From assembly GCA_009103225.1 (NCBI GenBank), contig RHPI01000777.1:1-64000 (forward strand): a stretch of 64,000 nt of DNA, written 5' to 3'. The notes beneath the pieces were generated by a model that ran no database searches, had not been told where the DNA came from, and saw only the letters and a list, made by a program, of their open reading frames with translations. The translations under genes were made by a program, and so were the position numbers. Within the stretch, counting starts at the first letter, position 1; every line of letters starts with the position of its first letter. Source of the stretch: Chlorokybus atmophyticus. Its lineage: Eukaryota; Plantae; Mesostigma and Chlorokybus algae. This document shows positions 8,650-64,000 of this stretch, piece after piece.

Positions 8650-11600
8650 GGCAGCAACAGGCAGGCTCAGGCAGGCTCAGGCTCCAGTCAGTCCCTCAGT
8701 CCTTAGTCAGTCACCGTGTAAAATTTGCGACGACACTAGCTGAGCGCGCCTGTCTTGAGCAAGCGCAGTGAGGCTGCGCGTGTGTGATTGCCAGCCTTAG
8801 CAGTGTTGCTCTCGTCGCCTAGGAGAGAATTAAACTTGGTTGCTCGCTGTTTTAAAAAGGTGTCCAGTCAGCGATAGTGATAGCAGCTGGCGCAGCGTGT
8901 CACAGCCCACTCGACCACAAAAGACTTGGTGCTTTTATGGTCGATTTGTGGTAATTTAATGTACCTTCCCGTTACATTCCCCCCCCACTTAAGAACGCTG
9001 ACGTCCTCGGCAGCTGCCCGGTCAGCTGGGGAATTACCCAAGGGGTTTGTTAGGGTCGGTCACCGGCCCCACAGCCAAGGACCGGCTAATTTAGGCCCAT
9101 ACCGGTCAACGCGCGCATATCGCGCCGCTGCCGGCCCCACAGGTCGCGTCGCCGCGATAGGCAGGTCGCGCCCTGCCGCGCCGACTGAACTGGTCAGTTT
9201 GGCGCGACTGCCATTAGGCAAGTCGCGACCCATCGATGATGGCACTTATAAAGTGACCATTTACGATTATTTAGTTTGGCGCGACTGCCATTAGGCAAGT
9301 CGCGACCCATCGATGATGGCAGTTATAAAGTGACCATTTACGATTATTGGATCGAGAAACAACGACCGCGGAATTCGTGTGCAAGGCAGGAATCGAACCC
9401 GGGTCTCAAGCTCCGATACCAATGTCACAGCCCACTCGACCACAAAAGACTTGGTGCTTTTATGGTCGATTTGTGGTAATTTAATGTACCTTCCCGTTAC
9501 ACAGCGTGTCAATAGACTGGCAGCGCCTTGCTGCCTTGCGGCTGCCAGGGTCGGGCATAAATGCTACAGCGCTCTTTCGGGCTGCGGGCATTCCTCTTCT
9601 CTCGGACAATGCCCCAATGGACATGTCTGCGTCCTTGATTTTAAAGACGGACGCTTCTTGCTGCACAGCAGCAAATGGATGCCGCTCATCCAGCTTTGGC
9701 TGAGCGGCAAGCCTGGAAGTTGAGAGACGGCAATCACTCTCTCTCCTACGACCTCCGGTGCAACCATTACAGCGGCCCTTGCAGGGGTTTCCGCAGGAAA
9801 CTCTCATCACACAAATAAGTTGTTGGAGGAATTCTCATAATTCTCATCACGCTCAGGGGTGTTGCATTTCTTATTGACCACGCATGATCATCCGCACGTT
9901 GCTATAACACATGCTCAATTTGCGGATTGGACCCAGCAGCTGCGCACTCGTGCGTTAGTGTTGAGGTTCTCTTTTACCCAAGAACAGGCAGCAGTCACAG
10001 CTGTGCGCTTAACGTGGCTAGCTAGAGTCTGTTCAAACGAAGAAGCGGGGGAGCTTGGTCTCTTCCACATATCAGCTCATGGGAGAGGAATTTTCAGTGT
10101 GTTTTCTCCTCCAGCGCAGGAGCTTCTTGAGTCTATGCACAAGCCAAACAAGGACGACTTCTTCTGTGCGGTGGGCTTCCAGTGCGTGTCCTTCGATGAG
10201 AGTCACCTTCCACTACTCGCTTTTAGGTTTCCTTTGTGGGAGCAAAGCCCGAGTTGCTTCCTTTTCTGCTCAACCGCTGCAGTAGTATGGGCAGCTTGGA
10301 GAAGCCCTGTCTGCTGGCCGTGGCTCACTTAGTTCGCCACCTCCGCGACACGCTACCGCTTCTCTCAGCGCCAGGTTAGAAGCTGCCCTTGAAGATATCT
10401 TTTAAAATTCACGGTGTGGAAGGGTGTGTTACGACGCCGGTGGACATCCTCAACAGACTCTGCACTTGCTTTCTTTGCAGGAAGCAAGGCCACACTCGCA
10501 ATGCTGGACCGCAACGCACCCGTGGTAAGAACGCACCTCCTCTTGCTATCTCTGCAACGAACCTCCGGCTGAAGCGGGTTGGACCCTGTTAGGCAGATCA
10601 GCAGCAAGGCCCGGGGGCAGCGGTCGAGAGGTCAGTGCTTCACACCTCCTAGGCAACACCCCACTACCTCATGTTGTTGAAGCCCCTATCGCTGCAAGGT
10701 TGGCCACAATACCCCCTCAAGTCCGCTCGCCAGCCATGCGCGCGCAAGCGGGGCAGGCCTCGCGTGGGCCCACGCCTTCGAGCAAGCCCTCAACCTCTCC
10801 TGCTAAACGCACCGTCAGCTCGCCTACTCGTGCACCTGGGCAGGGTATTAAACTCGCGGGGGTGAAGCTAGGAGTACAACTCAAGTAGACCGTAATGCGC
10901 CCAGCAGCGCAGAGGACGGCATCCAATGAGTCCGGTCAAGCGCTTCCCAACAGCTGGCTGCACACAGGCGGGCAACATGAGCTAATGACGATGCAGCAGA
11001 CAGCGCACGCTGCTACAACGCCGTACCTATCAGTAGCATTGATGGGCCAGAGCTCGCCACCCCACTCAACACATACTGCCAAGCCTTTGCAACTGGGCGC
11101 ACCGACGTCGTTTGTCGCCAAAGGACCTGCTGCAGGCAACACACGTGCCGCACTATTGCCATCTTCAGCCCCAGCCTCATTGCCGCTATGAGGGAGCGTT
11201 GAGAGTGTCCCCCCACAATCGCATATGTCTCCCTCGCTCACAATCACTGACCCCCCNNNNNNNNNNNNNNNNNNNNNNNNNNNNNNNNNNNNNNNNNNNN
11301 NNNNNNNNNNNNNNNNNNNNNNNNNNNNNNNNNNNNNNNNNNNNNNNNNNNNNNNNNNNNNNNNNNNNNNNNNNNNNNNNNNNNNNNNNNNNNNNNNNNN
11401 NNNNNNNNNNNNNNNNNNNNNNNNNNNNNNNNNNNNNNNNNNNNNNNNNNNNNNNNNNNNNNNNNNNNNNNNNNNNNNNNNNCCCGCCGTGGTCTCCCCA
11501 ACAAAAAGTTGGTGCGACATTGTTGAGGAGGAGAAGGCTGGCGGTTCCACGCTGCATGAGCTTGCGCCGATGGAAGAGCTCTCTTCGCAAGGTCTTGCAG

Positions 11601-26998: not shown

Positions 26999-27675
26999 NN
27001 NNNNNNNNNNNNNNNNNNNNNNNNNNNNNNNNNNNNNNNNNNNNNNNNNNNNNNNNNNNNNNNNNNNNNNNNNNNNNNNNNNNNNNNNNNNNNNNNNNNN
27101 NNNNNNNNNNNNNNNNNNNNNNNNNNNNNNNNNNNNNNNNNNNNNNNNNNNNNNNNNNNNNNNNNNNNNNNNNNNNNNNNNNNNNNNNNNNNNNNNNNNN
27201 NNNNNNNNNNNNNNNNNNNNNNNNNNNNNNNNNNNNNNNNNNNNNNNNNNNNNNNNNNNNNNNNNNNNNNNNNNNNNNNNNNNNNNNNNNNNNNNNNNNN
27301 NNNNNNNNNNNNNNNNNNNNNNNNNNNNNNNNNNNNNNNNNNNNNNNNNNNNNNNNNNNNNNNNNNNNNNNNNNNNNNNNNNNNNNNNNNNNNNNNNNNN
27401 NNNNNNNNNNNNNNNNNNNNNNNNNNNNNNNNNNNNNNNNNNNNNNNNNNNNNNNNNNNNNNNNNNNNNNNNNNNNNNNNNNNNNNNNNNNNNNNNNNNN
27501 NNNNNNNNNNNNNNNNNNNNNNNNNNNNNNNNNNNNNNNNNNNNNNNNNNNNNNNNNNNNNNNNNNNNNNNNNNNNNNNNNNNNNNNNNNNNNNNNNNNN
27601 NNNNNNNNNNNNNNNNNNNNNNNNNNNNNNNNNNNNNNNNNNNNNNNNNNNNNNNNNNNNNNNNNNNNNNNNNNN

Positions 27676-40866: not shown

Positions 40867-43552
40867 GCGTTGTGCCCTCACTGCTCTCTGCAGGTGGTTG
40901 ACTCTTGCCATGCTACCCTATTCTTCCAATTCCCACTACTTCAGGGTCTAAGGTTTTTTCTTAATGGTCGCCTTAGTTGTGTAAGGCTCTGCCTTAGCCT
41001 CCGCCTAATTGTATCACTGTTCGCTTGTGTTTGCGCTCTGTGATTGTGCATGGATTGTGCATAGTGTGCAACATAGCATCTATGGCCCCTCTCCGCTTGA
41101 GACTGCTATCTAGCAACTCTATTACAGGTTTTATATAACTATATAAAAAGTATATGTGCTTGATTTCTTATATAGTACAATATCATAGGGTTAAATACAT
41201 ATAACGTCGTTGTCTCCTCATGATGTGAGCATAATAAAGCAAAAATCGACATATGTTTCAACATTTACTCACGGCCAAGACTATTCTTGTGCACAAAGAT
41301 GTTTAACAGAGCAGACGTCGGTGCCCTAAGAATTTTGTTTTATGACGGAGTAACCATTAGCGAATATTATAATAGCGGGGGTAGACTGTAATCATCATAT
41401 CGCCGGCGGAACAATATCGAAGTACCGGTGCTGCTGTCACACTATTATCGATTAACTCGTGGTATTAGCGAAACAATACATTTATTGCTAAAGTTAATGA
41501 CATGCAAAGTGAACTGTAAACGTTGTTAGCGTGTTTTTTTTTGTGTCACAGGAAGGTAGCTTGTATGACTCATACATGCTATAAGCATGCAACTTAAGCA
41601 ACCATCCGTATTGGCAGTAATTTCATGTTGTTTGCTATAATTTTACGTTGTTTATCGTGTATTTGCATCACAATCATCTTTGAATTCTAACATAAGATGG
41701 TGTGAATACAATTGATACGTAGTAGCGTATTGTTATGACATAAAAGCGTGTACACAACTTGCATGTGCATGCATTGTGGTTTTGCAATTGGTTTTGCAAT
41801 ACATGTGCAAGATTCAAGCACATGTGTACATGCGCAAAAGCGCACTCTTATCGACGTGTACATAGGATGCAACATAGTTCTTGCACATGCAAGTCACACC
41901 GCATTCACATGACACACACAACCTCATAACATGCTTCACTGTGCCTGCAATCCCAAAACGCCACCGCTCGCTTGTAAGTTGCATGTAAGCTTAATTGTGT
42001 AACAATTTGTATTATTGTTGTCTTGCTTTGTTTGTGGCCGTTCATACAATATGTTGCTCATGGCTAGTGGCCCTATTACTACAGCATATGTAACATAGTG
42101 TACAATACATATACCCACAATAAACAAAGATTATGCGAGATGGTCATAATTACTACAAACATTACAAATAATAATAAGGCACAGTGCCAAGGGCTGGCCA
42201 AAGCCCCTAACAGCTTAATGTTCAACTAGACGGGCAAGTGACAAACATCATGTAGCAGGCAGCGGAGGCAAGCAGCAATGAGGAGAGCAGTCATAGCTCG
42301 CACAGCAGCCCACTTGAAATGGCAGCGCCACCGTTAGCAATTTCCAAGAGCAGGCAGTGCCGATAGTAGCGGCGCCGAAGTTTAAAATCAAATTGCCTGT
42401 ACACGTGCTCGCGCAAGCGTCCGTGTGTACAGAAAAATGAAGACGTTATTGTGTGTGCTTCCGCTCGCACGCAAGGTAGTGCAAAATACATATGTTTTGT
42501 ATACATTGTTGTCATGGATGCTTAAGCATTATGCGTGTGTGCACACGCACATACAACCATTGCCATTGATATCATAATTTAAAGGTGCATGTAGCCCAGC
42601 GTGAACACTATGTGCGCAAGTATTATATGAGCAATTCTGTAGGTTCTTGCGTCCGGCATGTTGGGAGTCTCGTTACTTGGCATGATGAAGAAACAGGCTG
42701 CACAGCTATGTGGCGTATTCTACGAGCACCTAGTCTACCCGCCCGCGGGGGGGGCCNNNNNNNNNNNNNNNNNNNNNNNNNNNNNNNNNNNNNNNNNNNN
42801 NNNNNNNNNNNNNNNNNNNNNNNNNNNNNNNNNNNNNNNNNNNNNNNNNNNNNNNNNNNNNNNNNNNNNNNNNNNNNNNNNNNNNNNNNNNNNNNNNNNN
42901 NNNNNNNNNNNNNNNNNNNNNNNNNNNNNNNNNNNNNNNNNNNNNNNNNNNNNNNNNNNNNNNNNNNNNNNNNNNNNNNNNNNNNNNNNNNNNNNNNNNN
43001 NNNNNNNNNNNNNNNNNNNNNNNNNNNNNNNNNNNNNNNNNNNNNNNNNNNNNNNNNNNNNNNNNNNNNNNNNNNNNNNNNNNNNNNNNNNNNNNNNNNN
43101 NNNNNNNNNNNNNNNNNNNNNNNNNNNNNNNNNNNNNNNNNNNNNNNNNNNNNNNNNNNNNNNNNNNNNNNNNNNNNNNNNNNNNNNNNNNNNNNNNNNN
43201 NNNNNNNNNNNNNNNNNNNNNNNNNNNNNNNNNNNNNNNNNNNNNNNNNNNNNNNNNNNNNNNNNNNNNNNNNNNNNNNNNNNNNNNNNNNNNNNNNNNN
43301 NNNNNNNNNNNNNNNNNNNNNNNNNNNNNNNNNNNNNNNNNNNNNNNNNNNNNNNNNNNNNNNNNNNNNNNNNNNNNNNNNNNNNNNNNNNNNNNNNNNN
43401 NNNNNNNNNNNNGGACCTCTCCCCCCCCCTCCTCTCCCAACACGCATTCAATGCCAGCAAAGCACATCAGTCAATGCATTCATGGCAAAGTATACAAGAT
43501 GCAATGCACTATTGCATGCGAGCATGTGCGGTTATCGCTAGTTACATTGGAC

Positions 43553-48627: not shown

Positions 48628-51573
48628 ATGGCGGCGGAGATGATGATGCTCGAGCACAGCCAGCCTGATTGCCCTGAAACGGTATGGCTATGTTTTAAGT
48701 TGGTATAGACTTGGTAATCGTTGCTCTCAGCCCCCNNNNNNNNNNNNNNNNNNNNNNNNNNNNNNNNNNNNNNNNNNNNNNNNNNNNNNNNNNNNNNNNN
48801 NNNNNNNNNNNNNNNNNNNNNNNNNNNNNNNNNNNNNNNNNNNNNNNNNNNNNNNNNNNNNNNNNNNNNNNNNNNNNNNNNNNNNNNNNNNNNNNNNNNN
48901 NNNNNNNNNNNNNNNNNNNNNNNNNNNNNNNNNNNNNNNNNNNNNNNNNNNNNNNNNNNNNNNNNNNNNNNNNNNNNNNNNNNNNNNNNNNNNNNNNNNN
49001 NNNNNNNNNNNNNNNNNNNNNNNNNNNNNNNNNNNNNNNNNNNNNNNNNNNNNNNNNNNNNNNNNNNNNNNNNNNNNNNNNNNNNNNNNNNNNNNNNNNN
49101 NNNNNNNNNNNNNNNNNNNNNNNNNNNNNNNNNNNNNNNNNNNNNNNNNNNNNNNNNNNNNNNNNNNNNNNNNNNNNNNNNNNNNNNNNNNNNNNNNNNN
49201 NNNNNNNNNNNNNNNNNNNNNNNNNCCCCCCCCCCCCCCCCCCCCCCCCCCCCTCGCCGAGAGCTGGCCTGTTAGATTGGTGGTGCGGCAGACAGAATGT
49301 CACGCAAACCATCTTCCACAAAACCCTTCTGTTGAGCACACGCAGTTACTGCCGGCGTCCGCTTCATGCAGCACCTAGCTCCATGCTGTATAGTTTCTTG
49401 GTGTTGTAACGTGTGTCTGAGCTCCCAGTTGATCATACCTTAGTGATCGTGTTTGTGGTATTGTGCAGCTTGCAGTCCATACGCGAGCTGCTGTGTTGTA
49501 TGCTCTTTGATAAGTTTTCAAGAACCCACAATACCAGCATTGTGGTCGTGGTATGCCTGGCAACAATGACAACAAAGTGCATACACGATGTCATACCCCG
49601 TCCATCTGAACAAAGCAGAGATTTTGTTAGCCTCAAATCGAACATGCTTTCACAATATATGTAGCTGCAAGCCACAAGTCTCGTGGTTATGCAATCGACA
49701 CGCCTTGTGCCGGAAACAATACAAGGCATTGTAGCAATCGCTGCACCAGTCCAGCTCATAAGAATTCAGCAATTTGATGTCAAGGACAACAACCCATGCA
49801 TACTTTGCTTGTTGGTCTCCAAGACATACTTGCGGCCCGTTGTTGAAGAGCTTTCTTACGGTCACTGAACCTGCCAGCAGGCTTTGGCAATGCAAATGCA
49901 AACAGCTGCCCTTGAGCCTTTTGTCCAATGCACAGGTGGCATGCAACGCTGACCAAACACCTGACTGGACCATATTGCCAGTGGATTGCTTGCAGCATAT
50001 TTTCACACAAGTTGGACCGCAAACCGCTGCCAAGGCGGCTGCGGTATGCCGGTACGTAATGCATTGTCGTGTGACAAATGCTGATGTAGTGCATGTGTGC
50101 GTGCGCCTGCCTGCGTGCATGCATGCAGCAGTCTGCGTGCGTACATCTGCATGCGCGCACATGTGCATCTGCATGTGTGTGCGTGGGCATACATGCGCGC
50201 TGTAGTTGCACTCAACCGCTGATACTATGTTGTAACTCACAGCAACTGGAAGACTTGCCGCGCAATTCGACTCTATATGGCAAAAGTTGTATCAGCTGGA
50301 CTTTCCAAGGAGCTGCGGCATGGCACGCTCGCATTGCAACAGCAACGCTGTTGGACGCAGCTGGCGCAGGCGCTTCATTGATCTACACAGGCGCGTGGCG
50401 AATTGGCCGTTATCCGGGCGCGTGGCACAGCGCCAACATGACTTGCACCCACGTTGTTTCCTGTCATCCGAGTTACCCTCCAGCCTGAACAACGCGGAAG
50501 CGGAAGTGGTGCTTTGCGACACAGTTGTAGCCACCCTCTACTGCTACGACACGGATGATGTGCTGAGCACTTATGTGCTGCATTTCAGGGACCTGACCGC
50601 TGATCAGTGCCAGAGCTTTCGCCTCCTCGAGACTGAGGATGTTTATTGTCGTGCCGCAATGGTATGGGACAAGCACCTCCTCACAGTGTACTTGGTCTCC
50701 GGGCACTTCTGGCATTGAGATGTTGATCGGCGCACCTGCGTCATGTGCGGCATTGTGCCCGATTGCTGTCGCAATGAGGAGAATTTGAAGGTTATGCCTC
50801 TCTACTTCGACAGCAGGCGTGTGGTTGTTCTAAGTGAAGACGATCATCTGAGTGAAGACCATCATGATGTGGTCGATCCGTATGAAGATCATCCATGCAC
50901 CGTGAGTGTTCAGTCACTGCCCGACTTTGCAATGTTAGGGGTTCATACAGTGGAAGAAGGCTTTGAGTTGGGCAACAGGTCGTGGACGACGTTGGATGGC
51001 GGGCTGGAGACAAATCTGCTGCTTCATGTGAGAAAGAAAATCCATGATCATCGTTTCCACGAGCAATTGCTATTTTCGGTAACCCCCCGCAATGGTGACA
51101 TAACCACATTGCCACGTGACCTTCATGCCGCGACGAGCAGAGTGTTGTGCGAGGACGCAATTGTGCAAGGAACACGAATTACGGTTGGGGTGGGGGACAT
51201 GCCTACATGTGTCGTGTTGATGTTCGAGCCCTGGTTGGTGTGCTGTGGCAAGACCGGTAGCGCGACGCAGCTTGCTGCACCAGAGGGGTACAGTTTCTAT
51301 GCTAGCACCACCAGCTGCGACTGATTTATGGGGCAAGTTGCTGATGCAGGTGATTACGGCTACACTTGGTTGCTGCTGAATACAATCACCTTCAAAGATC
51401 GTTGGCTATGCATATCCGAAAGCGCTTACGAGTTGCTTGACCGGAGCCTTGTTGCCTGCTGCAACGGCGATTACAGTTCTAGCCCCCTTGTTGGCTTCAC
51501 CATGCACGGACGACATGTAGTTCTTGCCAGCGTCCACACAATCACTGCGTTAGACACTTGTTTAACCTCTTGA
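48628..51573 (+). pseudogene. F-box protein pseudogene
   Basis: F-box DWTILPVDCLQHIFTQVGPQTAAKAAAVCR|NW..AAQFDSIWQKLYQLDFP needs a 1-nt frameshift at ~50250. ORFs 50287-50718, 50743-51324 and 51328-51573 share one frame separated by single TGA codons. 5' end uncertain because of the gap. Confidence 0.7.
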
Positions 51574-51958: not shown

Positions 51959-52217
<259 letters not shown>

Positions 52218-52542
52218 GACTATGGTGGAAGGGGTTCTTACCAGATGCGGGTGGACAATAATGTTGGCCACCTGCCTCCACTCTCCCCGTGCTCTTCATG
52301 CATTAATCGCGGCTGATAGACTCTTCTAGCCACGCACCTCGTCTCAGTTGAGATCAGTGCTTGCTGCGTGCCCGAGTGGTTGCAATGTGGGGGGGACAGC
52401 TAACACAGTGATGTCCTTTCACAACACAACAGAATGGCTACTTCGCGACATTTAGTATAAGCGCAGTACCACGCAACGTGCGTGTTGTAGGCACAAGTAG
52501 GCAATGTAACCACCACCACCACCACCAACAACAAAAACAGCA

Positions 52543-54535
52543 TCACGCCGGTGCCCCAAGCACAATCCTCAGCAGGTTGGGCCGATCGGTTGGGTCCCTT
52601 GTGCCTGCGCCGTACGAGCACCTTAGCAGCCGCATGCTTGGCCACCGCGTGCACGATCCCAATGTCGACACTGCCGCGGCAACCAGACATGCGCCCGTGG
52701 GGGTCACGAGCTCCATATCGCAACCCGCATCGAACGTGACCACGCCCGTGCCACAGAGAACGCTGACCTGAGGGAGGGTGGGGAGGAGAGACAATAGTGT
52801 GTGCGTGCGTGCGTGCGTGCATATCGTCGGCGATACTTTTTCATGCGCGCTTGTCCCCATGCGTGACAACATGCGACAGCACACTCACTGTGGCAGGCGG
52901 GGGGTTTGGCAGTGGGCCGTGCGCTGCGCCGCGTATGATGCCGCGTCCAACGGGGAGCGGGGACACCGCCACTTCTCCCGCCCCCAGGTAGTCCAGCGCC
53001 ACGGACGCCGCCACCACATCCACGATGCTGTCCACCGCACCCACCTGACAGGCATCAACTGGTCAACTTGACGGGTTCCTGGTTCCTGCACACTGCATAA
53101 ACTGACTCTTGGCCTTGTACGCCTTCACAATGTCAGCTACTGTGACTTGCAATGGATGTATCCTCACGCACAAACCAGTGCTCGTGCGTGTGCGCATGTG
53201 TGCGTGTGTATACAGTTGCACATGCAAACACCCTTGACAGCTTCACTTGCTTCGTGAAAGTGCACGTCGTCGATGTATTCAACGCCATGCACGCTAGCTT
53301 CAGCCACAGCGAGCCGTTGGAACGCATCCAACGCCAGCCTCGCCGCCCCTTCCGTCAGACCGTTGTCCTTCGCAGCTGCCGCCGATATCAGCCGCCTGAT
53401 CTCAGCGTAGTCGCGGGGAGGCTGGGCCTTGGTCTCCCTCACAACGAACCTGCGGGCAGGGGAGTTATGGACATCATGTGTGTGTGCGTGTCGCATCATG
53501 TGCACCATGTGCACCTCTACACGTGCGCTTCAGTGCCTGCGTGCATGCGTGAGCACGTTGGAGAGTAAGTCTGCGTGTGTATTTGTGTGCGCACGTGTGC
53601 ATGCGTGCGTGATCGTGCACGGTCGTGCGTGCGCACGTGATCACGTGCACGTGGGTGTCTGTCTGCGCGCGCACGCACGTGCACAGGTGGCGGCTTGCAT
53701 GCATGCTTGCGGGTGTATCGTCATGTGTTGCTGCATACACACATACACACATACCTGTGTTCATATTCATATGCACGCATGTAGGGCGTTCCCTTATGAC
53801 TTGCCTCGGTGCATAGATGGCCGAGCGCGTAACCCCCTGAAACTCGCACTCGTATCCTTCCAACCCCAATTTGGACAGCCCCTCCATTACAACCTGCCCT
53901 CGCACTTGCACGTCTCAACACCCCCACCCACCCACCCACCCACCCACACCCACCCACTCACCTCCACAGGCACTCCCAGATCCACCATCGCAGCGACAAC
54001 CATGTCCCCCGCGAGTCCCGATGCGTGCGCGTCCAGGAAGAGCAGCAGGCCCGCGCCCGCCCCGCGAGTCAGAGGGGGATTGCGACGGTGCGGGGTGTAA
54101 GCAGAAGAGTGGGAGTGGGAGTGGGAGTGGGTGTGATTGTGTGTGGGGGTGTGGGGGTGGGGGTGGGAGTGGGAGTCAACATGGGAGTGAGTAGTAGTCG
54201 GGGTCTGAACGAGGACCTCAAAAACGATTGTTCAGCTCAGTGTTGGAGTTGGTGCTAGTGTAGATGTCACGTCGTCAACACACAAGTCTGATACATGAGT
54301 CTGTGCAAGCTGGGCGTACCTTGCTGTGGCCATTGTCGACCTCGTGCTCGTGCTCCTCGGCAAGGGTATGCGTGTGCGTGTGTGTGTGCTCCTTGTGCTC
54401 GTGGTCGTGGTCGTGGTGCTTGTGGGCGCGCACCAAGCCTTGTGTACTTGCTGTGTGGTGTTTCCTTGCACGCGGTGGTTGTTGTTGTCGTTGTGGTCGC
54501 CGATGCTGCTGTGGGAGACCACACGAGGCAGGCAT
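52543..54535 (-). CDS. larC: Nickel-pincer cofactor nickel insertase LarC (DUF111), N-terminal (LarC1) domain only, with His-rich N-terminal extension; 6 coding exons
   Basis: Spliced product contains LLFLDAHASGLAGDMVVAAMVDLGVP, FQRLAVAEASVHG, VHFHE|VGAVDSIVDVV, VSPLPVGRG, AHGPLPNPPPAT, ELVTPTGACLV and YGAGTRDPTDRPNLLRIVLG, all LarC motifs in correct order. Start ATG 54535 is inferred. Confidence 0.88.
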
Positions 54536-55404
54536 TTGCAAAAGGAGTCAGTCTCCAAGTGATAGTGTTGCATTGCGAGGGATAAGGGCTTTACTCATGT
54601 GCAGGTGGCTGTTTGGACTGCACGGTGAGCAATGTGTGTTGCGTGCGGGTGGGTGTACACATGCGCGTGCTGCGTACTCGTGCGTCTGTACGAGCACGTG
54701 GGTGCACGTGTGTGCAAGTGTGTTTGTTCAATTGTGTCCATATGTGTGTGCCAAGTGTACATGTGTATCTCCTTGAGTTACCTGCCATTGAAGCGGCCGA
54801 CTGAAAAACCAGATACGAGCTGTTGCAGCTGCGGCCGTCATTACCATCATTGCATCTGGCACACAGACACACACACTTTGCACCATGTTGTTTCACAACC
54901 AAGTCAGGCTCCAGACAAATTGTGCTGAACAATGCAGGCTTAATCACAGGTAAACGCATGGAAGGTTTAGAGCACGTGTAAGTCTTAGAAGCAAGAAAGA
55001 TGCACAGTGTGGTTTGCATGCGTGGCACAGTTGACGGGATGTATGACGCCTGCAGAACTGCACGGTACGTGACTCGCATGCACAGAGGAATGAAGGTCTT
55101 ACAGCTGCGGATCTCTCTCAGCAGCACAGCTGTGTTGCTCCTCTCTCTCTCCTCCTCCTCCTCCTCCTCCACCGCCGTCGCCGCCGCCGCCTCCTCGGCA
55201 GCGTGTCCCGCGGCTTAGTTAAGACGATGCCCTCTAAAGGACTGACCAGGATCGACTCACTCCAACTCTCCGATCCACGTCGAACAATACGGATCACATC
55301 ACGTGAGTCACGCGTCACTGTGTTACGGCTGTAACAACCGCCACGTGGTGGCCTGACGGCGGCGGCGGCGGCGGCGGCGGCGGAGGAGGAGGCGGAGGTT
55401 GACG

Positions 55405-60458: not shown

Positions 60459-62255
60459 TGTATTGCACATGTATGCGCGCGTGATATGAGTTTGTTTCAC
60501 TCAACTTGGCAGAACGCACATGTGTGCTGCTGTACACAAGCTGTGGCAAACGATGGTGCACTGCATGTACGTACTTGAAAGCTCGAGTCTTGCACTGCTT
60601 TCATGTTGAACTGCAGCCAATGCGATTCAATTTGCTATTGTGCTACTTGCTTGCTTCGCATGCACATGCATCAAACTCGCAGTCAAGAAACATTAGCTGA
60701 GTCAGACACAACAGTTTGCTGGTCACTTTTGCTGATCTGTCATTCAGGAGCGACACAACCTGATGTAGACTAGCAGCTACTGCTGCGTTGCAGCTTGTTG
60801 ACAACTGGTGGCACTGCCATATAGCATATGACTACTATGCACTGGGCAGACTTGCGTGCTGAGTTTTGTTCATTAACCTGAATGCGTACAGTGCATGTGG
60901 CTACAGCACAAGAATGCTTAGGGTGTAGTATTGCATTGTAAAGGACCCAAAGCATGCATCACCTGAAAGCACAAGCGGACAAGCAATTTGTTGTTGGTAG
61001 TACCAGTCGGNNNNNNNNNNNNNNNNNNNNNNNNNNNNNNNNNNNNNNNNNNNNNNNNNNNNNNNNNNNNNNNNNNNNNNNNNNNNNNNNNNNNNNNNNN
61101 NNNNNNNNNNNNNNNNNNNNNNNNNNNNNNNNNNNNNNNNNNNNNNNNNNNNNNNNNNNNNNNNNNNNNNNNNNNNNNNNNNNNNNNNNNNNNNNNNNNN
61201 NNNNNNNNNNNNNNNNNNNNNNNNNNNNNNNNNNNNNNGAGGGGGGCGGGAGGGGAGAGAGATAGAGGTGATCTGCATTGCAAGTGCAAGACAAGACAAG
61301 ACAAGACATGCAGTAGCACAACAGCAGCTGGCCTCACAGACCTTTACTAGCGAAGGCAATGACTAGCTATGTGCCGCAGCTAAGTGCATGCAAGCAGCTG
61401 TACACGCTAGGGCTAGTGTTAAGGTTGTGGTTGACTATGTGCTACATGCAGATTCAGGTGGGTTCAAGGATACGCTTGCACAGGTGTCAGGACGACAACT
61501 CTTCGTCCGTGTCGGGGTTCAACCAACTGGTTGAACGAGCCGCTCACAAGAAGTGCACCCGCGGTCTGCGCAAGAACGAGACACGGCTACGCTTCTTAGC
61601 GACTCGGCTGTCACGCCTCCGCCTGACAGCTGAGTCGTTTCAACCACGTCATGCTCTGTCTTACGCAAGTCAGGCTCCCAACTATGGGGTGGCACCAACT
61701 TACTAGTAACCAGTTGCCAACTGCTCCCTCATCACTCAAGCGTTCAGTTGAACACCTGCCTAAAGCCATCCTCCCTCCCGTCAGCTCAGCCGACGCCACT
61801 GCCGGCGCCATGGCGCACATGCACATGCACATGCACATGCAAGCAGTGAGTGCGGTCGATATCTGCTGAAGTTGACTTAAAGTCTCTCATTCAACCAATA
61901 TCGAGGTAATATTCGGAACCCGATCTGACAAAACGGGCTTGTCTAAATGAAACGAATCACGATGTGGTCGATCCGGCTTGGAAGGCGAGCTAACGTTCGC
62001 GGCCAACCACCTTGCCGCCCTGTGGCTGGCGGCAGGAGCGGCGGTCTCCTTGGCGGCAGAGGCGGCGGGGATTGTTGGTGTTTCTAGGGGCTTGCTTGAG
62101 AGTCGTAGAGACGATAGGGAGGCGGCGTCATCTGCTGAGACTGCTTGCTCGGTGGGTGCGCGTGCAGGCTGCCGGCGCAGGTGGAGGATTAGGGTTTGCT
62201 GCTTGTGCAGGTTGTTGGTTGGGAGGGGAGCAGCAGGGTTAGGCTGCACGCCGCC

Positions 62256-64000
62256 ATGGCGGCGACAAGTGAAAGAGACGTGTTTGCCGATGACGCCGGG
62301 GAATCCGCGGACGCTGTGGGTGCGGAGATTGCCGCTATGTCCGCAGACGATCTGGCTCGCCGCACCCGCCTGCTCGATACGGAGATCCGCGTGCTGAAGG
62401 TCAGCTGTCGGTGTATTGTTCATTGTGCTTGGATTGCAGCGCGAGGGGGTGCAGTCCAGTTACACTTCAGCTGTAGCCGTTGAAGGCTAGCATGTTGAAT
62501 TGTTGTGGCTTGGTAGTTGTCAGTTTTTGTCACCTCTTTTGTTTGTTTTGGTTGTGTTGCCGCTACTGTTGTGTGATGCGTACTTCTCCCCATGAACAGT
62601 TTACATGCGCGCATGCGCTTAGCTCACACAGTCCGCCACCATCGTAGATCTAGCCTACATGCAGTCATGCAGCAGAAGTTCTGAACAGATCCTGCCACCG
62701 CTGTATAGCAGACTGTGTTCAGTATACATGTCTATTCTGCATGCATGTTCTCTCTGTAACTGGCATGCTCATACACTGAGGTGCAGATGCAGCACCCCAT
62801 TTGACTAAGTGCAGTATCTGTTACATTCTGTTGTACGAGAACCGGCCCTACGTGTTGAGTTGCGACTGGCTGAGTGCGAAACGTTCTATGCCGCTACAGG
62901 ATGAGAGCCAGAGGTTGCAGCTGGATCTTAGCGGCACCAAGGAGAAAATAAAGGACAACCAAGAGAAAATCAAGCTAAATAAGCAGCTGCCTTATCTAGT
63001 GGGCAACGTTGTTGAGGTATATCAAGCAATATGTGTGTCATGCACCGGAAGCATGTGGTTAGGTGGAGTCAGTTGGGCTCTCTGCATGTTGCACAATGCA
63101 CGACAAATGCATTACTGGATTGCAGATTTTGGATGTGAACCCTGAGGATGAAGAGGACGGAGCAAACATTGACTTGGATTCCCTTCGCAAAGGGAAGTGT
63201 GTTGTGCTGAAGACTTCAACTCGACAGGTGAGGACGCTTGTAAAGCATACCAAAGCAACTTACACAGGGTATCAAGTTAGCTGGTTGACAGTTTTGTTGA
63301 AGTTGCAGCAAGGATGACCCTTTGTTGACTACCTTGTTTGCAGACGATTTTCTTGCCTGTTGTTGGGCTTGTCGATCCTGCAGTGTTGAAGCCTGGCGAC
63401 CTGGTGGGCGTGAATAAGGACAGCTACCTCATACTTGACACACTGCCTGCTGAGTATGACTCGCGTGTGAAAGCCATGGAGGTTGATGAGAAACCAACAG
63501 AAGACTATTCTGACATTGGTGGTTTAGACAAGCAGGTACCAATAGTTTGTGCTTTGTTTTTTTTGTCACTCATATATTGTGTGAATGATGGGGTTTGCTT
63601 GCTAGGGGTGCAGTTGAGGAGCACCGCTGACATTATGCATTCATCGATGTAGATTCAAGAGCTAGTGGAGGCAATCGTGCTGCCTATGACGCATAAAGAG
63701 CGGTTTGACGCCATTGGCATCCGGCCACCCAAGGGCATTTTGCTATACGGGCCACCGGGCACAGGCAAAACGCTGATGGCCAGGGCTTGCGCAGCACAAA
63801 CAAACGCCACTTACTTGAAACTTGCTGGACCACAACTGGTGCAGGTATGTACACCACTGGTTGCAGTTGTGCGTGTGTTCACCGTCAGCCTTCACTTGTC
63901 ATTGCTTGCGTTGTGCTTGTGTATCTGCTGGCATGCGTGTGCTAAGACAACCGCATTACTAACTGCCATGGTCTGTGACAGATGTTCATCGGTGATGGCG
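62256..64000 (+). CDS. RPT5: 26S proteasome AAA-ATPase regulatory subunit 6A (3' truncated by window end)
   Basis: [26 protein letters not shown]; [12 protein letters not shown]|[11 protein letters not shown]; [40 protein letters not shown]; [37 protein letters not shown]|MFIGDG. Confidence 0.97.

What the first reader, a model, noticed from the sequence alone, without database searches (positions are those of the whole stretch)
52543..54535. Intron-containing eukaryotic larC: nickel-pincer cofactor machinery in an alga
Seen: all hallmark LarC N-domain motifs over spliceosomal exons, embedded between host genes, so not contamination. Established: LarC inserts Ni into the NPN cofactor of lactate racemase-family enzymes (with LarB and LarE) and is overwhelmingly prokaryotic. 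Inference: a domesticated horizontal acquisition, implying either an NPN pathway or a repurposed nickel-handling role in this eukaryote.
Basis: partly seen in the sequence, partly recalled or inferred. Interest (0 to 1): 0.75.

Follow-up and report, generated by a model that had tools for sequence, protein, structure and literature searches.

The report
Expressed algal gene for half a nickel insertase
This is a real, spliced and transcribed green-algal gene for only the nickel-binding front half (LarC1) of the bacterial enzyme LarC, and it belongs to an old, so far unstudied family shared by many green algae rather than being a recent one-off acquisition.

Summary
A minus-strand gene at 52310-55151 carries the LarC N-domain motifs on spliceosomal exons. 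Spliced transcript contigs from two studies match it.

The start is most likely 54850.
- There are 7 introns, two of them GC-AG. The protein has 389 aa.
- The mRNA runs through the stop at 52543 into a 3'UTR, so the product is LarC1 only. No LarC2 (CTP-binding half) is found anywhere in the window.

All seven acidic-pocket residues and the essential histidines of solved LarC are kept. Four other histidines, two of them facing the neighbouring subunit/LarC2 cleft, are replaced.

Relatives with the same truncated build occur in Mantoniella, Mesostigma, Closterium, Mesotaenium and marine picoeukaryote contigs. They form one clade (100/99) nested among Myxococcota-like bacterial LarCs and away from cyanobacteria. 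The transfer is therefore old and shared, not specific to this alga.

I found no paper on this family. Whether it serves nickel-pincer cofactor synthesis remains open.

The scan had already noted other larC-like copies in this genome, and, unchecked, a separate LarC2 gene and a LarB gene.

The parts
55103..55151 (-). 5'UTR exon. The 5' end is not defined; this is the end of the transcript contig.
   Evidence: The 49 loose letters of X1 record 1 beyond 54855 match window 55103-55132 onward. The intron 55102-54856 is GTAAGA..CCAG, 247 nt. No in-frame ATG lies upstream in this exon.
54782..54855 (-). Exon with the most likely start codon (ATG 54850-54848). It begins a basic presequence free of acidic residues. 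A 2-codon uORF, ATGCAATGA, overlaps the start.
   Evidence: RNA joints at 54508/54782 and at 54855. ORF of the spliced mRNA. The first 55 aa hold 8 R, 2 K, 0 D and 0 E.
54320..54508 (-). Exon holding the rest of the presequence and the first part of the His-rich tract (HKHHDHDHEHKEHTHTHTH...).
   Evidence: RNA joint that skips 273 nt, seen in X1 and X2.
53962..54204 (-). Exon with a His-Ser repeat tract built from a hexanucleotide array, then the RNPPLTRGAGAG...LFLDAHASGLAGDM start of the LarC1 core (D153 = D15 of M. thermoacetica LarC).
   Evidence: PF01969 profile positions 1-26. TRF period-6 array at 54107-54176. Alignment to P0205. RNA joint 54204/54320.
53805..53893 (-). Exon 'VVMEGLSKLGLEGYECEFQGVTRSAIYAPR'. 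It is followed by a GC-AG intron (53804-53450, donor GCAAGT, 355 nt).
   Evidence: RNA joint 53448/53804. GCAAGT..AG is the only standard splice-site pair (GT-AG or GC-AG) among the permitted cut positions.
53251..53449 (-). Exon with R209, E247, H251, H260, H262 and E263 (= R71, E104, H108, H116, H118, E119). It is followed by a second GC-AG intron (53250-53045, donor GCAAGT, 206 nt).
   Evidence: PF01969 positions 43-121, E = 1.8e-10. Alignment to PDB 12bi. RNA joint.
52889..53044 (-). Exon 'VGAVDSIVD...AAHGPLPNPPPAT' with D268, D272 and H305 (= D124, D128, H160).
   Evidence: PF01969 positions 118-176, E = 4.4e-16. Alignment to 12bi. RNA joints.
52310..52767 (-). Last exon. It holds the end of LarC1 (ELVTPTG, YGAGTRD..DRPNLLR), the stop TGA at 52545-52543, and about 233 nt of 3'UTR.
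   Evidence: PF01969 positions 172-234. The X1 contig runs unbroken from 52765 to 52310 and X2 to 52358, so no downstream coding exon is spliced on.

Best explanation
This is a nuclear, expressed gene for a stand-alone LarC1 protein of 389 aa. From the N-terminus it has a basic presequence that looks like an organelle transit peptide, then a His-rich metal-binding tract (30 His in the first 150 aa), then a complete LarC1 domain that ends where LarC2 would begin. It is this genome's intact member of an old green-lineage family. The family descends from one bacterial LarC of a Myxococcota-like clade that already carried an N-terminal His tract.

Most likely mechanism (inferred, not shown): the His tract and the conserved His cluster collect nickel. 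The conserved acidic pocket binds the pyridinium-bis-thiocarboxylate nucleotide. The protein then carries out the nickel-insertion step of nickel-pincer nucleotide (NPN) synthesis in trans with a separately encoded LarC2, the half that activates the substrate with CTP. In short, it would be a permanently split LarC.
For: Shown:
- The gene is spliced and transcribed in two studies.
- The ORF is intact.
- Between the two strains the core shows 5 synonymous against 2 non-synonymous differences.
- The LarC1 domain is complete: PF01969 1-234 and TIGR00299 1-165/165.
- All seven pocket residues whose alanine variants cripple M. thermoacetica LarC are kept (D15, R71, E104, E119, D124, D128, E187). 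So are H108, H118 and H160, whose alanine variants drop below 10% activity, and H116 (PMC13510736). Keeping a substrate pocket is not expected of a mere metal chaperone.
- The build is conserved across Chlorophyta and streptophyte algae in one clade with 100/99 support.
- One bacterial homologue (P0324, matched through its LarC2 part) sits next to a PF00731 (LarB-type) gene.

Leads only, not checked by me: other readers' notes report a plastid-targeted LarC2-only gene and a LarB gene elsewhere in this genome.
Against: - LarC2, which bacterial LarC needs for CTP-dependent activation, is absent from the gene and from the window.
- In M. thermoacetica LarC the length and composition of the LarC1-LarC2 linker matter for activity (PMC13510736). 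An untethered pair is therefore not obviously competent.
- H53 and H226, which line the neighbouring-subunit/LarC2 cleft, are S and R here. H70 and H72 are P and D.
- I could not verify any LarC2, LarB, LarE or LarA in this genome or in any green alga.
- The targeting is read from composition only.
Confidence: 0.5

Rival explanations
1. It is a repurposed nickel (or other metal) store or chaperone. After LarC2 was lost, the LarC1 domain with its long His tract served only to bind and hand over metal, for example to urease or another nickel enzyme of the alga. NPN chemistry would play no part.
For: - There is no LarC2 in the gene or the window.
- The His tract is very large: 30 His here and 73 in the N-terminal part of the Mesostigma protein.
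- The tract moves between termini within the family, as expected of a loosely constrained metal sponge.
- The cleft histidines H53 and H226 are replaced.
- An unchecked scan note reports a urease-ureF-ureD cluster in this genome, and no note reports LarA.
Against: - All seven acidic-pocket residues assigned to binding the nucleotide intermediate are invariant, in this protein and in the 10-sequence algal alignment. Metal storage alone would not hold these.
- Unchecked notes of LarC2-only and LarB genes in the same genome point the other way.
Confidence: 0.25
2. It is a LarC1-type insertase working on a different substrate or cofactor, or without CTP activation. That would be a metal-insertion reaction in the organelle that is related to, but distinct from, the bacterial NPN pathway.
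For: - The pocket and His cluster are kept while LarC2 and the cleft histidines are not.
- New NPN-type cofactor users are still being found (PMC13524815).
- The family has been conserved over a very long time without a tethered LarC2.
Against: - There is no positive evidence for another substrate.
- The pocket residues are the same as in NPN-making LarC.
Confidence: 0.15
3. It is a non-functional remnant: a decaying duplicate, like the neighbouring copy that another agent judged broken, or a transcribed pseudogene.
For: - Several larC-like copies lie in this genome. One, 16.6 kb beyond the window, was judged decayed.
- The protein lacks half of the bacterial enzyme.
Against: - The ORF of 389 codons is intact across 7 correctly spliced introns in two strains.
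- The core shows 5 synonymous against 2 non-synonymous differences.
- All functional residues are kept.
- The truncated build is the ancestral state of the whole algal clade, not decay.
Confidence: 0.05

Closest known systems
Full-length bacterial LarC (pyridinium-3,5-bisthiocarboxylic acid mononucleotide nickel insertase), e.g. Moorella thermoacetica LarC, PDB 12bi (PMC13510736)
   Same: The LarC1 domain aligns end to end: for the orthologue P0205, E = 1.3e-42 over chain residues 20-254. D15, R71, E104, H108, H116, H118, E119, D124, D128, H160 and E187 are all conserved in the window protein.
   Different: - There is no linker and no LarC2/CTP-binding domain.
- H53, H70, H72 and H226 are replaced.
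- A eukaryotic presequence and a long terminal His tract are added.
- The gene has 7 spliceosomal introns.
Lactiplantibacillus plantarum larC1/larC2 (two ORFs joined by programmed frameshift) and the bacterial LarC1-only / LarC2-only clusters of the ESM Atlas
   Same: LarC1 and LarC2 are coded as separate reading frames. Proteins of about 290-310 aa with LarC1 only, and of about 140-155 aa with LarC2 only, exist in Bacillota.
   Different: - In L. plantarum the active product is the fused protein made by frameshifting. Here the mRNA ends in a 3'UTR, so no fusion is possible.
- The algal clade is not related to the Bacillota forms but to Myxococcota-like full-length LarCs.
Auto-annotated green-algal 'LarC family nickel insertion protein' entries: Mantoniella antarctica (P0200), Mesostigma viride Mv09141 (P0205), Closterium NIES-65/68 (P0217, P0430), Mesotaenium ME000095S10271 (P0006)
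   Same: - They share the LarC1-only build that ends at DRPNLLR.VLG.
- They share the RNPPL.RG.G.GK lead-in and a presequence plus His tract.
- They fall in the same clade, with 55-65% identity.
   Different: - This is another species' member, 64.5% identical to the closest named one.
- The length and position of the His tract differ.
- None of these entries has been studied experimentally, as far as the held library shows.
Eukaryotic NPN biology already reported: Phytophthora nicotianae LarAH15 (gluconate 2-epimerase) and the statement that NPN-biosynthetic genes occur in some unicellular eukaryotes (PMC11770544)
   Same: Genes of the NPN system occur outside prokaryotes.
   Different: - That work concerns the cofactor user LarA in an oomycete.
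- It says nothing on green algae, on LarC architecture or on a split LarC.

Membership tests
LarC (NPN nickel insertase; Pfam PF01969, NCBIfam TIGR00299) | LarC1 (N-terminal, nickel-binding) domain detectable by the family profiles | tested here: met
   Exons cover PF01969 positions 1-234/375 with E values down to 4e-16. TIGR00299 nickel_LarC1 is covered 1-165/165, and the exon scores of 39 + 60 + 50 bits compare with a cut-off of 90 for the whole protein (a rough sum).
LarC (NPN nickel insertase; Pfam PF01969, NCBIfam TIGR00299) | LarC2 (C-terminal, CTP-binding, hexamer core) domain in the same polypeptide | tested here: not met
   The mRNA contig runs through the stop at 52543 into the 3'UTR. 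tblastn with three full-length LarCs finds nothing for their LarC2 parts anywhere in the 64 kb at E <= 1. The algal orthologues scanned with Pfam stop at profile position about 234-242, and the algal rows have only short tails after the LarC1 match.
LarC (NPN nickel insertase; Pfam PF01969, NCBIfam TIGR00299) | Histidine cluster needed for activity in M. thermoacetica LarC (H108, H118, H160 essential; H116, H53, H226 contributory) | tested here: met
   H251, H262, H305 and H260 are present. The contributory H53 and H226 are S191 and R377, and H70 and H72 are P208 and D210. The essential set is therefore met and the peripheral set is not.
LarC (NPN nickel insertase; Pfam PF01969, NCBIfam TIGR00299) | Conserved acidic substrate pocket (D15, R71, E104, E119, D124, D128, E187) | tested here: met
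   D153, R209, E247, E263, D268, D272 and E334 are all present. D15 is placed through the Pfam match and the P0205 alignment. All are invariant in the algal alignment A1.
LarC (NPN nickel insertase; Pfam PF01969, NCBIfam TIGR00299) | Co-occurrence with LarB and LarE (and a cofactor user such as LarA) in the same genome | not testable with these tools
   Only this window can be read. Unchecked scan notes name a LarC2-only gene and a LarB gene elsewhere in the genome, and none names LarE or LarA. My search for algal LarC2-only proteins returned only bacterial fragments.
LarC (NPN nickel insertase; Pfam PF01969, NCBIfam TIGR00299) | CTP-dependent nickel insertion into P2TMN | not testable with these tools
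Green-lineage stand-alone LarC1 clade (defined here) | Falls inside the clade of LarC1-only proteins that holds Mantoniella, Mesostigma, Closterium and Mesotaenium | tested here: met
   Careful ML tree: 23 rows form one clade with support 100/99. A second tree with named bacterial genomes gives 99. Only 5 of the rows carry a species name (a sixth, P0415, is unnamed). The others are assigned by their build, and for the two contigs inspected (P0168, P0201) by eukaryotic neighbours.

The most novel reading that the evidence does not exclude
Green algae of both Chlorophyta and Streptophyta make a nickel-pincer nucleotide cofactor inside an organelle, using a LarC that was split for good into separate LarC1 and LarC2 proteins soon after an ancient transfer from a Myxococcota-like bacterium. 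If so, the covalent tether found important in bacterial LarC is dispensable in nature, and an unknown NPN-dependent enzyme works in the green lineage.
Probability: 0.35. Interest if true: 0.7.

Novelty: new variant of a known kind. Interest (0 to 1): 0.45.

Why it matters
Nickel-pincer nucleotide chemistry is regarded as essentially prokaryotic. The only eukaryotic enzyme shown to use it so far comes from an oomycete.

A conserved, expressed and apparently organelle-targeted LarC1 across green algae would make two questions testable:
- Does the green lineage make and use this organometallic cofactor?
- Can the two halves of LarC work untethered? Recent structural work on the bacterial enzyme makes this doubtful.

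If instead the domain was repurposed, it would be a new nickel-handling protein of algae, with relevance to nickel use by marine picoplankton.

On its own, this locus is one more member of a family already present, without study, in public proteomes.

Tried and rejected
1. It lies in an intron that both RNA contigs remove.
2. A downstream LarC2 exon is rejected. The last exon runs unspliced 233 nt past the stop, and no LarC2 similarity is found in the window.
3. A GT-AG reading of introns 53450-53804 and 53045-53250 is rejected. Among the cut positions the RNA allows, GCAAGT..AG is the only standard splice-site pair.
4. Plastid (cyanobacterial) ancestry is rejected. Nodosilinea and Leptolyngbya LarCs fall far outside the group that holds the algal clade.
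5. An algal 'relocation' of the His tract to the N-terminus is rejected. Most of the closest bacterial LarCs already carry an N-terminal His-rich extension before the core (3-27 His; a few have none). Distant LarCs do not.
6. The search for algal LarC2-only proteins gave nothing usable. The word search with a LarC2 query returned only bacterial fragments or late-start gene calls, and the two largest contigs had bacterial neighbours. The ESM Atlas gave only bacterial clusters. The scan index by sequence was blank, which means nothing.
7. The literature held nothing on the subject. No paper combines the nickel-pincer cofactor with algae apart from a toxicology review, and the DUF111 hits were DUF111x false matches.
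8. Steps not done because the spliced protein has no reference and I did not type it: a whole-protein Pfam or PDB search, a structure prediction and a targeting prediction for the window protein. Exon references and the orthologue P0205 were used instead.
9. The organism was not identified. Run names are coded, and the window's own protein did not appear in the protein collections.

Full report
**Observation.** On the minus strand between 52.3 and 55.2 kb lie stop-free stretches that match the LarC family. Pfam PF01969 matches with E = 1e-3, 1.8e-10, 4.4e-16 and 7.1e-13, covering profile positions 1-26, 43-121, 118-176 and 172-234 of 375. NCBIfam TIGR00299 'nickel_LarC1' is covered from 1 to 165 of 165. 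The hallmark motifs read directly from the sequence are LFLDAHASGLAGDM, AVAEASVHG, VHFHEVGAVDSIVD, AAHGPLPNPPPAT, ELVTPTG and DRPNLLR.

**Gene model from RNA.** One run of 2013 (X1, contig 100% identical to the window) and one of 2021 from another study (X2, a few differences) hold contigs that lie on the window in pieces joined exactly at my predicted introns. Both runs are only guessed to be RNA by the tool. Contigs that lack all the introns are most simply mRNA.

- Two further 5' exons exist, at 54855-54782 and from 55103 upward.

The spliced mRNA has one long ORF from ATG 54850 to TGA 52545-52543, 389 codons. No in-frame ATG lies further upstream in the known 5' exon. There are seven introns. 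Five are GT-AG and two (53804-53450 and 53250-53045) are GC-AG with the same GCAAGT donor. Among the cut positions the RNA allows, this is the only standard splice-site pair.

**A half enzyme by design.** Both RNA contigs run unbroken from the last splice site (52767) through the stop codon, X1 to 52310 and X2 to 52358. Nothing is therefore spliced on downstream. tblastn of three full-length bacterial LarCs against the whole window hits only with their LarC1 parts. Their LarC2 parts (about 155 aa, the CTP-binding hexamer core) find nothing at E <= 1. The product is LarC1 only.

**Functional residues.** The cryo-EM and mutagenesis study of Moorella thermoacetica LarC (PMC13510736) names two sets of residues.
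- A histidine cluster: the H108A, H118A and H160A variants retain under 10% activity, and H53, H116 and H226 retain about 60%.
- An acidic pocket next to it, proposed to hold the nucleotide intermediate: D15, R71, E104, E119, D124, D128 and E187.

The PDB chain 12bi is numbered +18 relative to the paper, and this offset places all of these residues correctly. Direct exon-to-chain alignments, together with the orthologue alignment, show that the window protein keeps D153, R209, E247, H251, H260, H262, E263, D268, D272, H305 and E334. These are all seven pocket residues and all essential histidines (positions). Four residues are replaced: H53 to S191, H70 to P208, H72 to D210 and H226 to R377. 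According to the paper, H53 and H226 come from the neighbouring subunit and line the LarC1-LarC2 cleft.

**Relatives.** An exhaustive search with the last exon found 563 relatives. Many of the best ended exactly where the query ends. Word searches with two of these gave named proteins: Mantoniella antarctica (UniRef 'LarC family nickel insertion protein'), Mesostigma viride, Closterium NIES-65 and NIES-68, and Mesotaenium endlicherianum. They also gave many unnamed proteins from Tara, ENA and Logan contigs. Two such contigs have eukaryotic neighbours: FtsH, a papain-type peptidase and an L-type lectin on one, and cytochrome haem lyase, Aquarius and actin in pieces on the other.

Against the window core, proteins fall into two sharp classes. 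One has tails that are mostly under about 50 aa and no LarC2. The other has a tail of about 155-170 aa that contains LarC2. Pfam stops at profile position 234-242 in every algal protein tested. The best match is Mesostigma, at 64.5% over 262 aa. The best full-length bacterial protein reaches 61%.

**Phylogeny.** A careful ML tree of 75 LarC1 cores puts all 23 LarC1-only rows, the window included, in one clade with support 100/99. The clade has a Mamiellophyceae-type subclade (100/100) and a looser group holding Mesostigma, Closterium, Mesotaenium and the window. Only five rows are named to species, so the 'eukaryotic' label of the rest rests on their build and, for the two contigs inspected, on their neighbours.

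A scan of one genome per bacterial species gave the closest named genomes. These were a Thermoanaerobaculia MAG (55%), then Myxococcales and Polyangiaceae MAGs (47-53%), with cyanobacteria at 44%. In the tree with these rows, the algal clade (99) sits in a 95-supported group with the Thermoanaerobaculia MAG and with metagenomic proteins labelled Deltaproteobacteria, Polyangiales and Acidiferrobacterales. That group sits in a 97-supported group with Myxococcota. The two cyanobacterial LarCs lie well outside it.

The simplest history is one old transfer from a bacterium of this group into an ancestor of Chlorophyta plus Streptophyta, followed by loss or separation of LarC2. The immediate donor is unresolved.

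**The His tract.** The first 150 residues hold 30 histidines. Part of the tract is coded by a period-6 array giving His-Ser repeats. Most bacterial LarCs of the sister group also have 3-27 histidines in a 40-110 aa extension before the core and few in the internal loop. Distant LarCs start the core at about residue 10. The N-terminal tract is therefore inherited and then expanded, not relocated in the alga. Some family members carry it at the C-terminus instead.

**Constraint.** Of the differences between X2 and the window that the tool lists, the LarC1 core shows 5 synonymous and 2 non-synonymous. The presequence and His region show 3 synonymous and 3 non-synonymous, one codon with two changes being counted as non-synonymous. 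The numbers are small but in the direction of purifying selection on the core.

**Presequence.** The first 55 residues have 8 Arg, 2 Lys and no Asp or Glu. Orthologues have comparable extensions. I read this as an organelle transit peptide. That is an inference from composition only.

**Rest of the genome.** The scan had noted this stretch before (s1-194500). It had also noted further larC-like copies 11.5 and 16.6 kb beyond the window and on other pieces, one of them judged a decayed copy by another agent. Other first-stage notes, unchecked, report a plastid-targeted LarC2-only gene, a LarB gene and a urease cluster. None reports LarA or LarE. I could not test these. My own attempts to find LarC2-only proteins of algae returned only bacterial fragments.

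**What it most likely does.** Three steps are shown.
- It is an expressed, constrained, complete LarC1 domain.
- The nickel cluster and the nucleotide pocket are intact.
- There is no LarC2.

The rest is inferred. I think it inserts nickel in NPN synthesis in trans with a separate LarC2, inside an organelle (confidence 0.5). The main argument is that the pocket residues, which serve the nucleotide and not the metal, are invariant across the clade. The main arguments against are the missing LarC2, the reported importance of the tether and the replaced cleft histidines.

The rivals are:
- a pure metal store or chaperone (0.25);
- an insertase for another substrate (0.15);
- a dead gene (0.05).

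**Novelty.** PMC11770544 states that NPN genes occur in some unicellular eukaryotes and characterises an oomycete LarA homologue. Related algal proteins carry automatic LarC names. No paper in the held library treats LarC in algae or a stand-alone eukaryotic LarC1. This is a variant of a known kind, and it is of moderate interest as a single locus.

**Limits.**
- The spliced protein has no reference, so whole-protein searches and a fold of the window protein were not run.
- The organism is not identified.
- Both RNA runs are assembled contigs, so they show presence and splicing but not expression level.

Noticed in passing
window 53045-53250 and 53450-53804 (minus strand): Two of the seven introns of one gene are GC-AG, and both have the donor GCAAGT. 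RNA joints confirm this. It may reflect a raised share of GC-AG introns in this genome.
   Followed up: partly
window 51962-52215: A perfect (AG)127 microsatellite lies about 95 nt beyond the 3' end of the transcript contig.
   Followed up: no
window 54107-54176 and 54395-54417 (minus strand coding): The His-rich tract is coded by hexanucleotide arrays (CCACTC = His-Ser, GACCAC = Asp-His). Its length can therefore change by repeat slippage. Between the two strains one change, L72H, adds a histidine.
   Followed up: partly
window 54847-54855 (minus strand): A two-codon upstream ORF, ATG CAA TGA, overlaps the most likely start codon (ATGCAATGATGG).
   Followed up: no
window 63329-64000 (+): These are exons of a proteasomal AAA-ATPase (Rpt-type): OB C-terminal domain and AAA P-loop. 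This is the only clearly identified host gene near the locus. It runs off the window end.
   Followed up: partly
window 11257-11482, 26999-27675, 42757-43412, 48736-49225, 61011-61238: Assembly gaps (runs of N). Two of them lie within 10 kb of the gene, so the local gene order is not fully known.
   Followed up: no
runs X6 and X3 on window 52980-53271 and 54369-54511: Short contigs 90-95% identical to the gene, one with the same intron-4 junction. They point to an expressed paralogue or a diverged strain of the same organism label.
   Followed up: no
protein P0007 (ENA contig of 2746 bp): A metagenomic protein joins a histone-deacetylase-type domain (PF00850) to a LarC1-only domain of the algal clade. 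It may be a true fusion or two genes merged by the gene caller.
   Followed up: no
proteins P0204, P0208, P0211, P0182: In these members of the algal clade the His-rich tract sits after the LarC1 domain instead of before it.
   Followed up: partly
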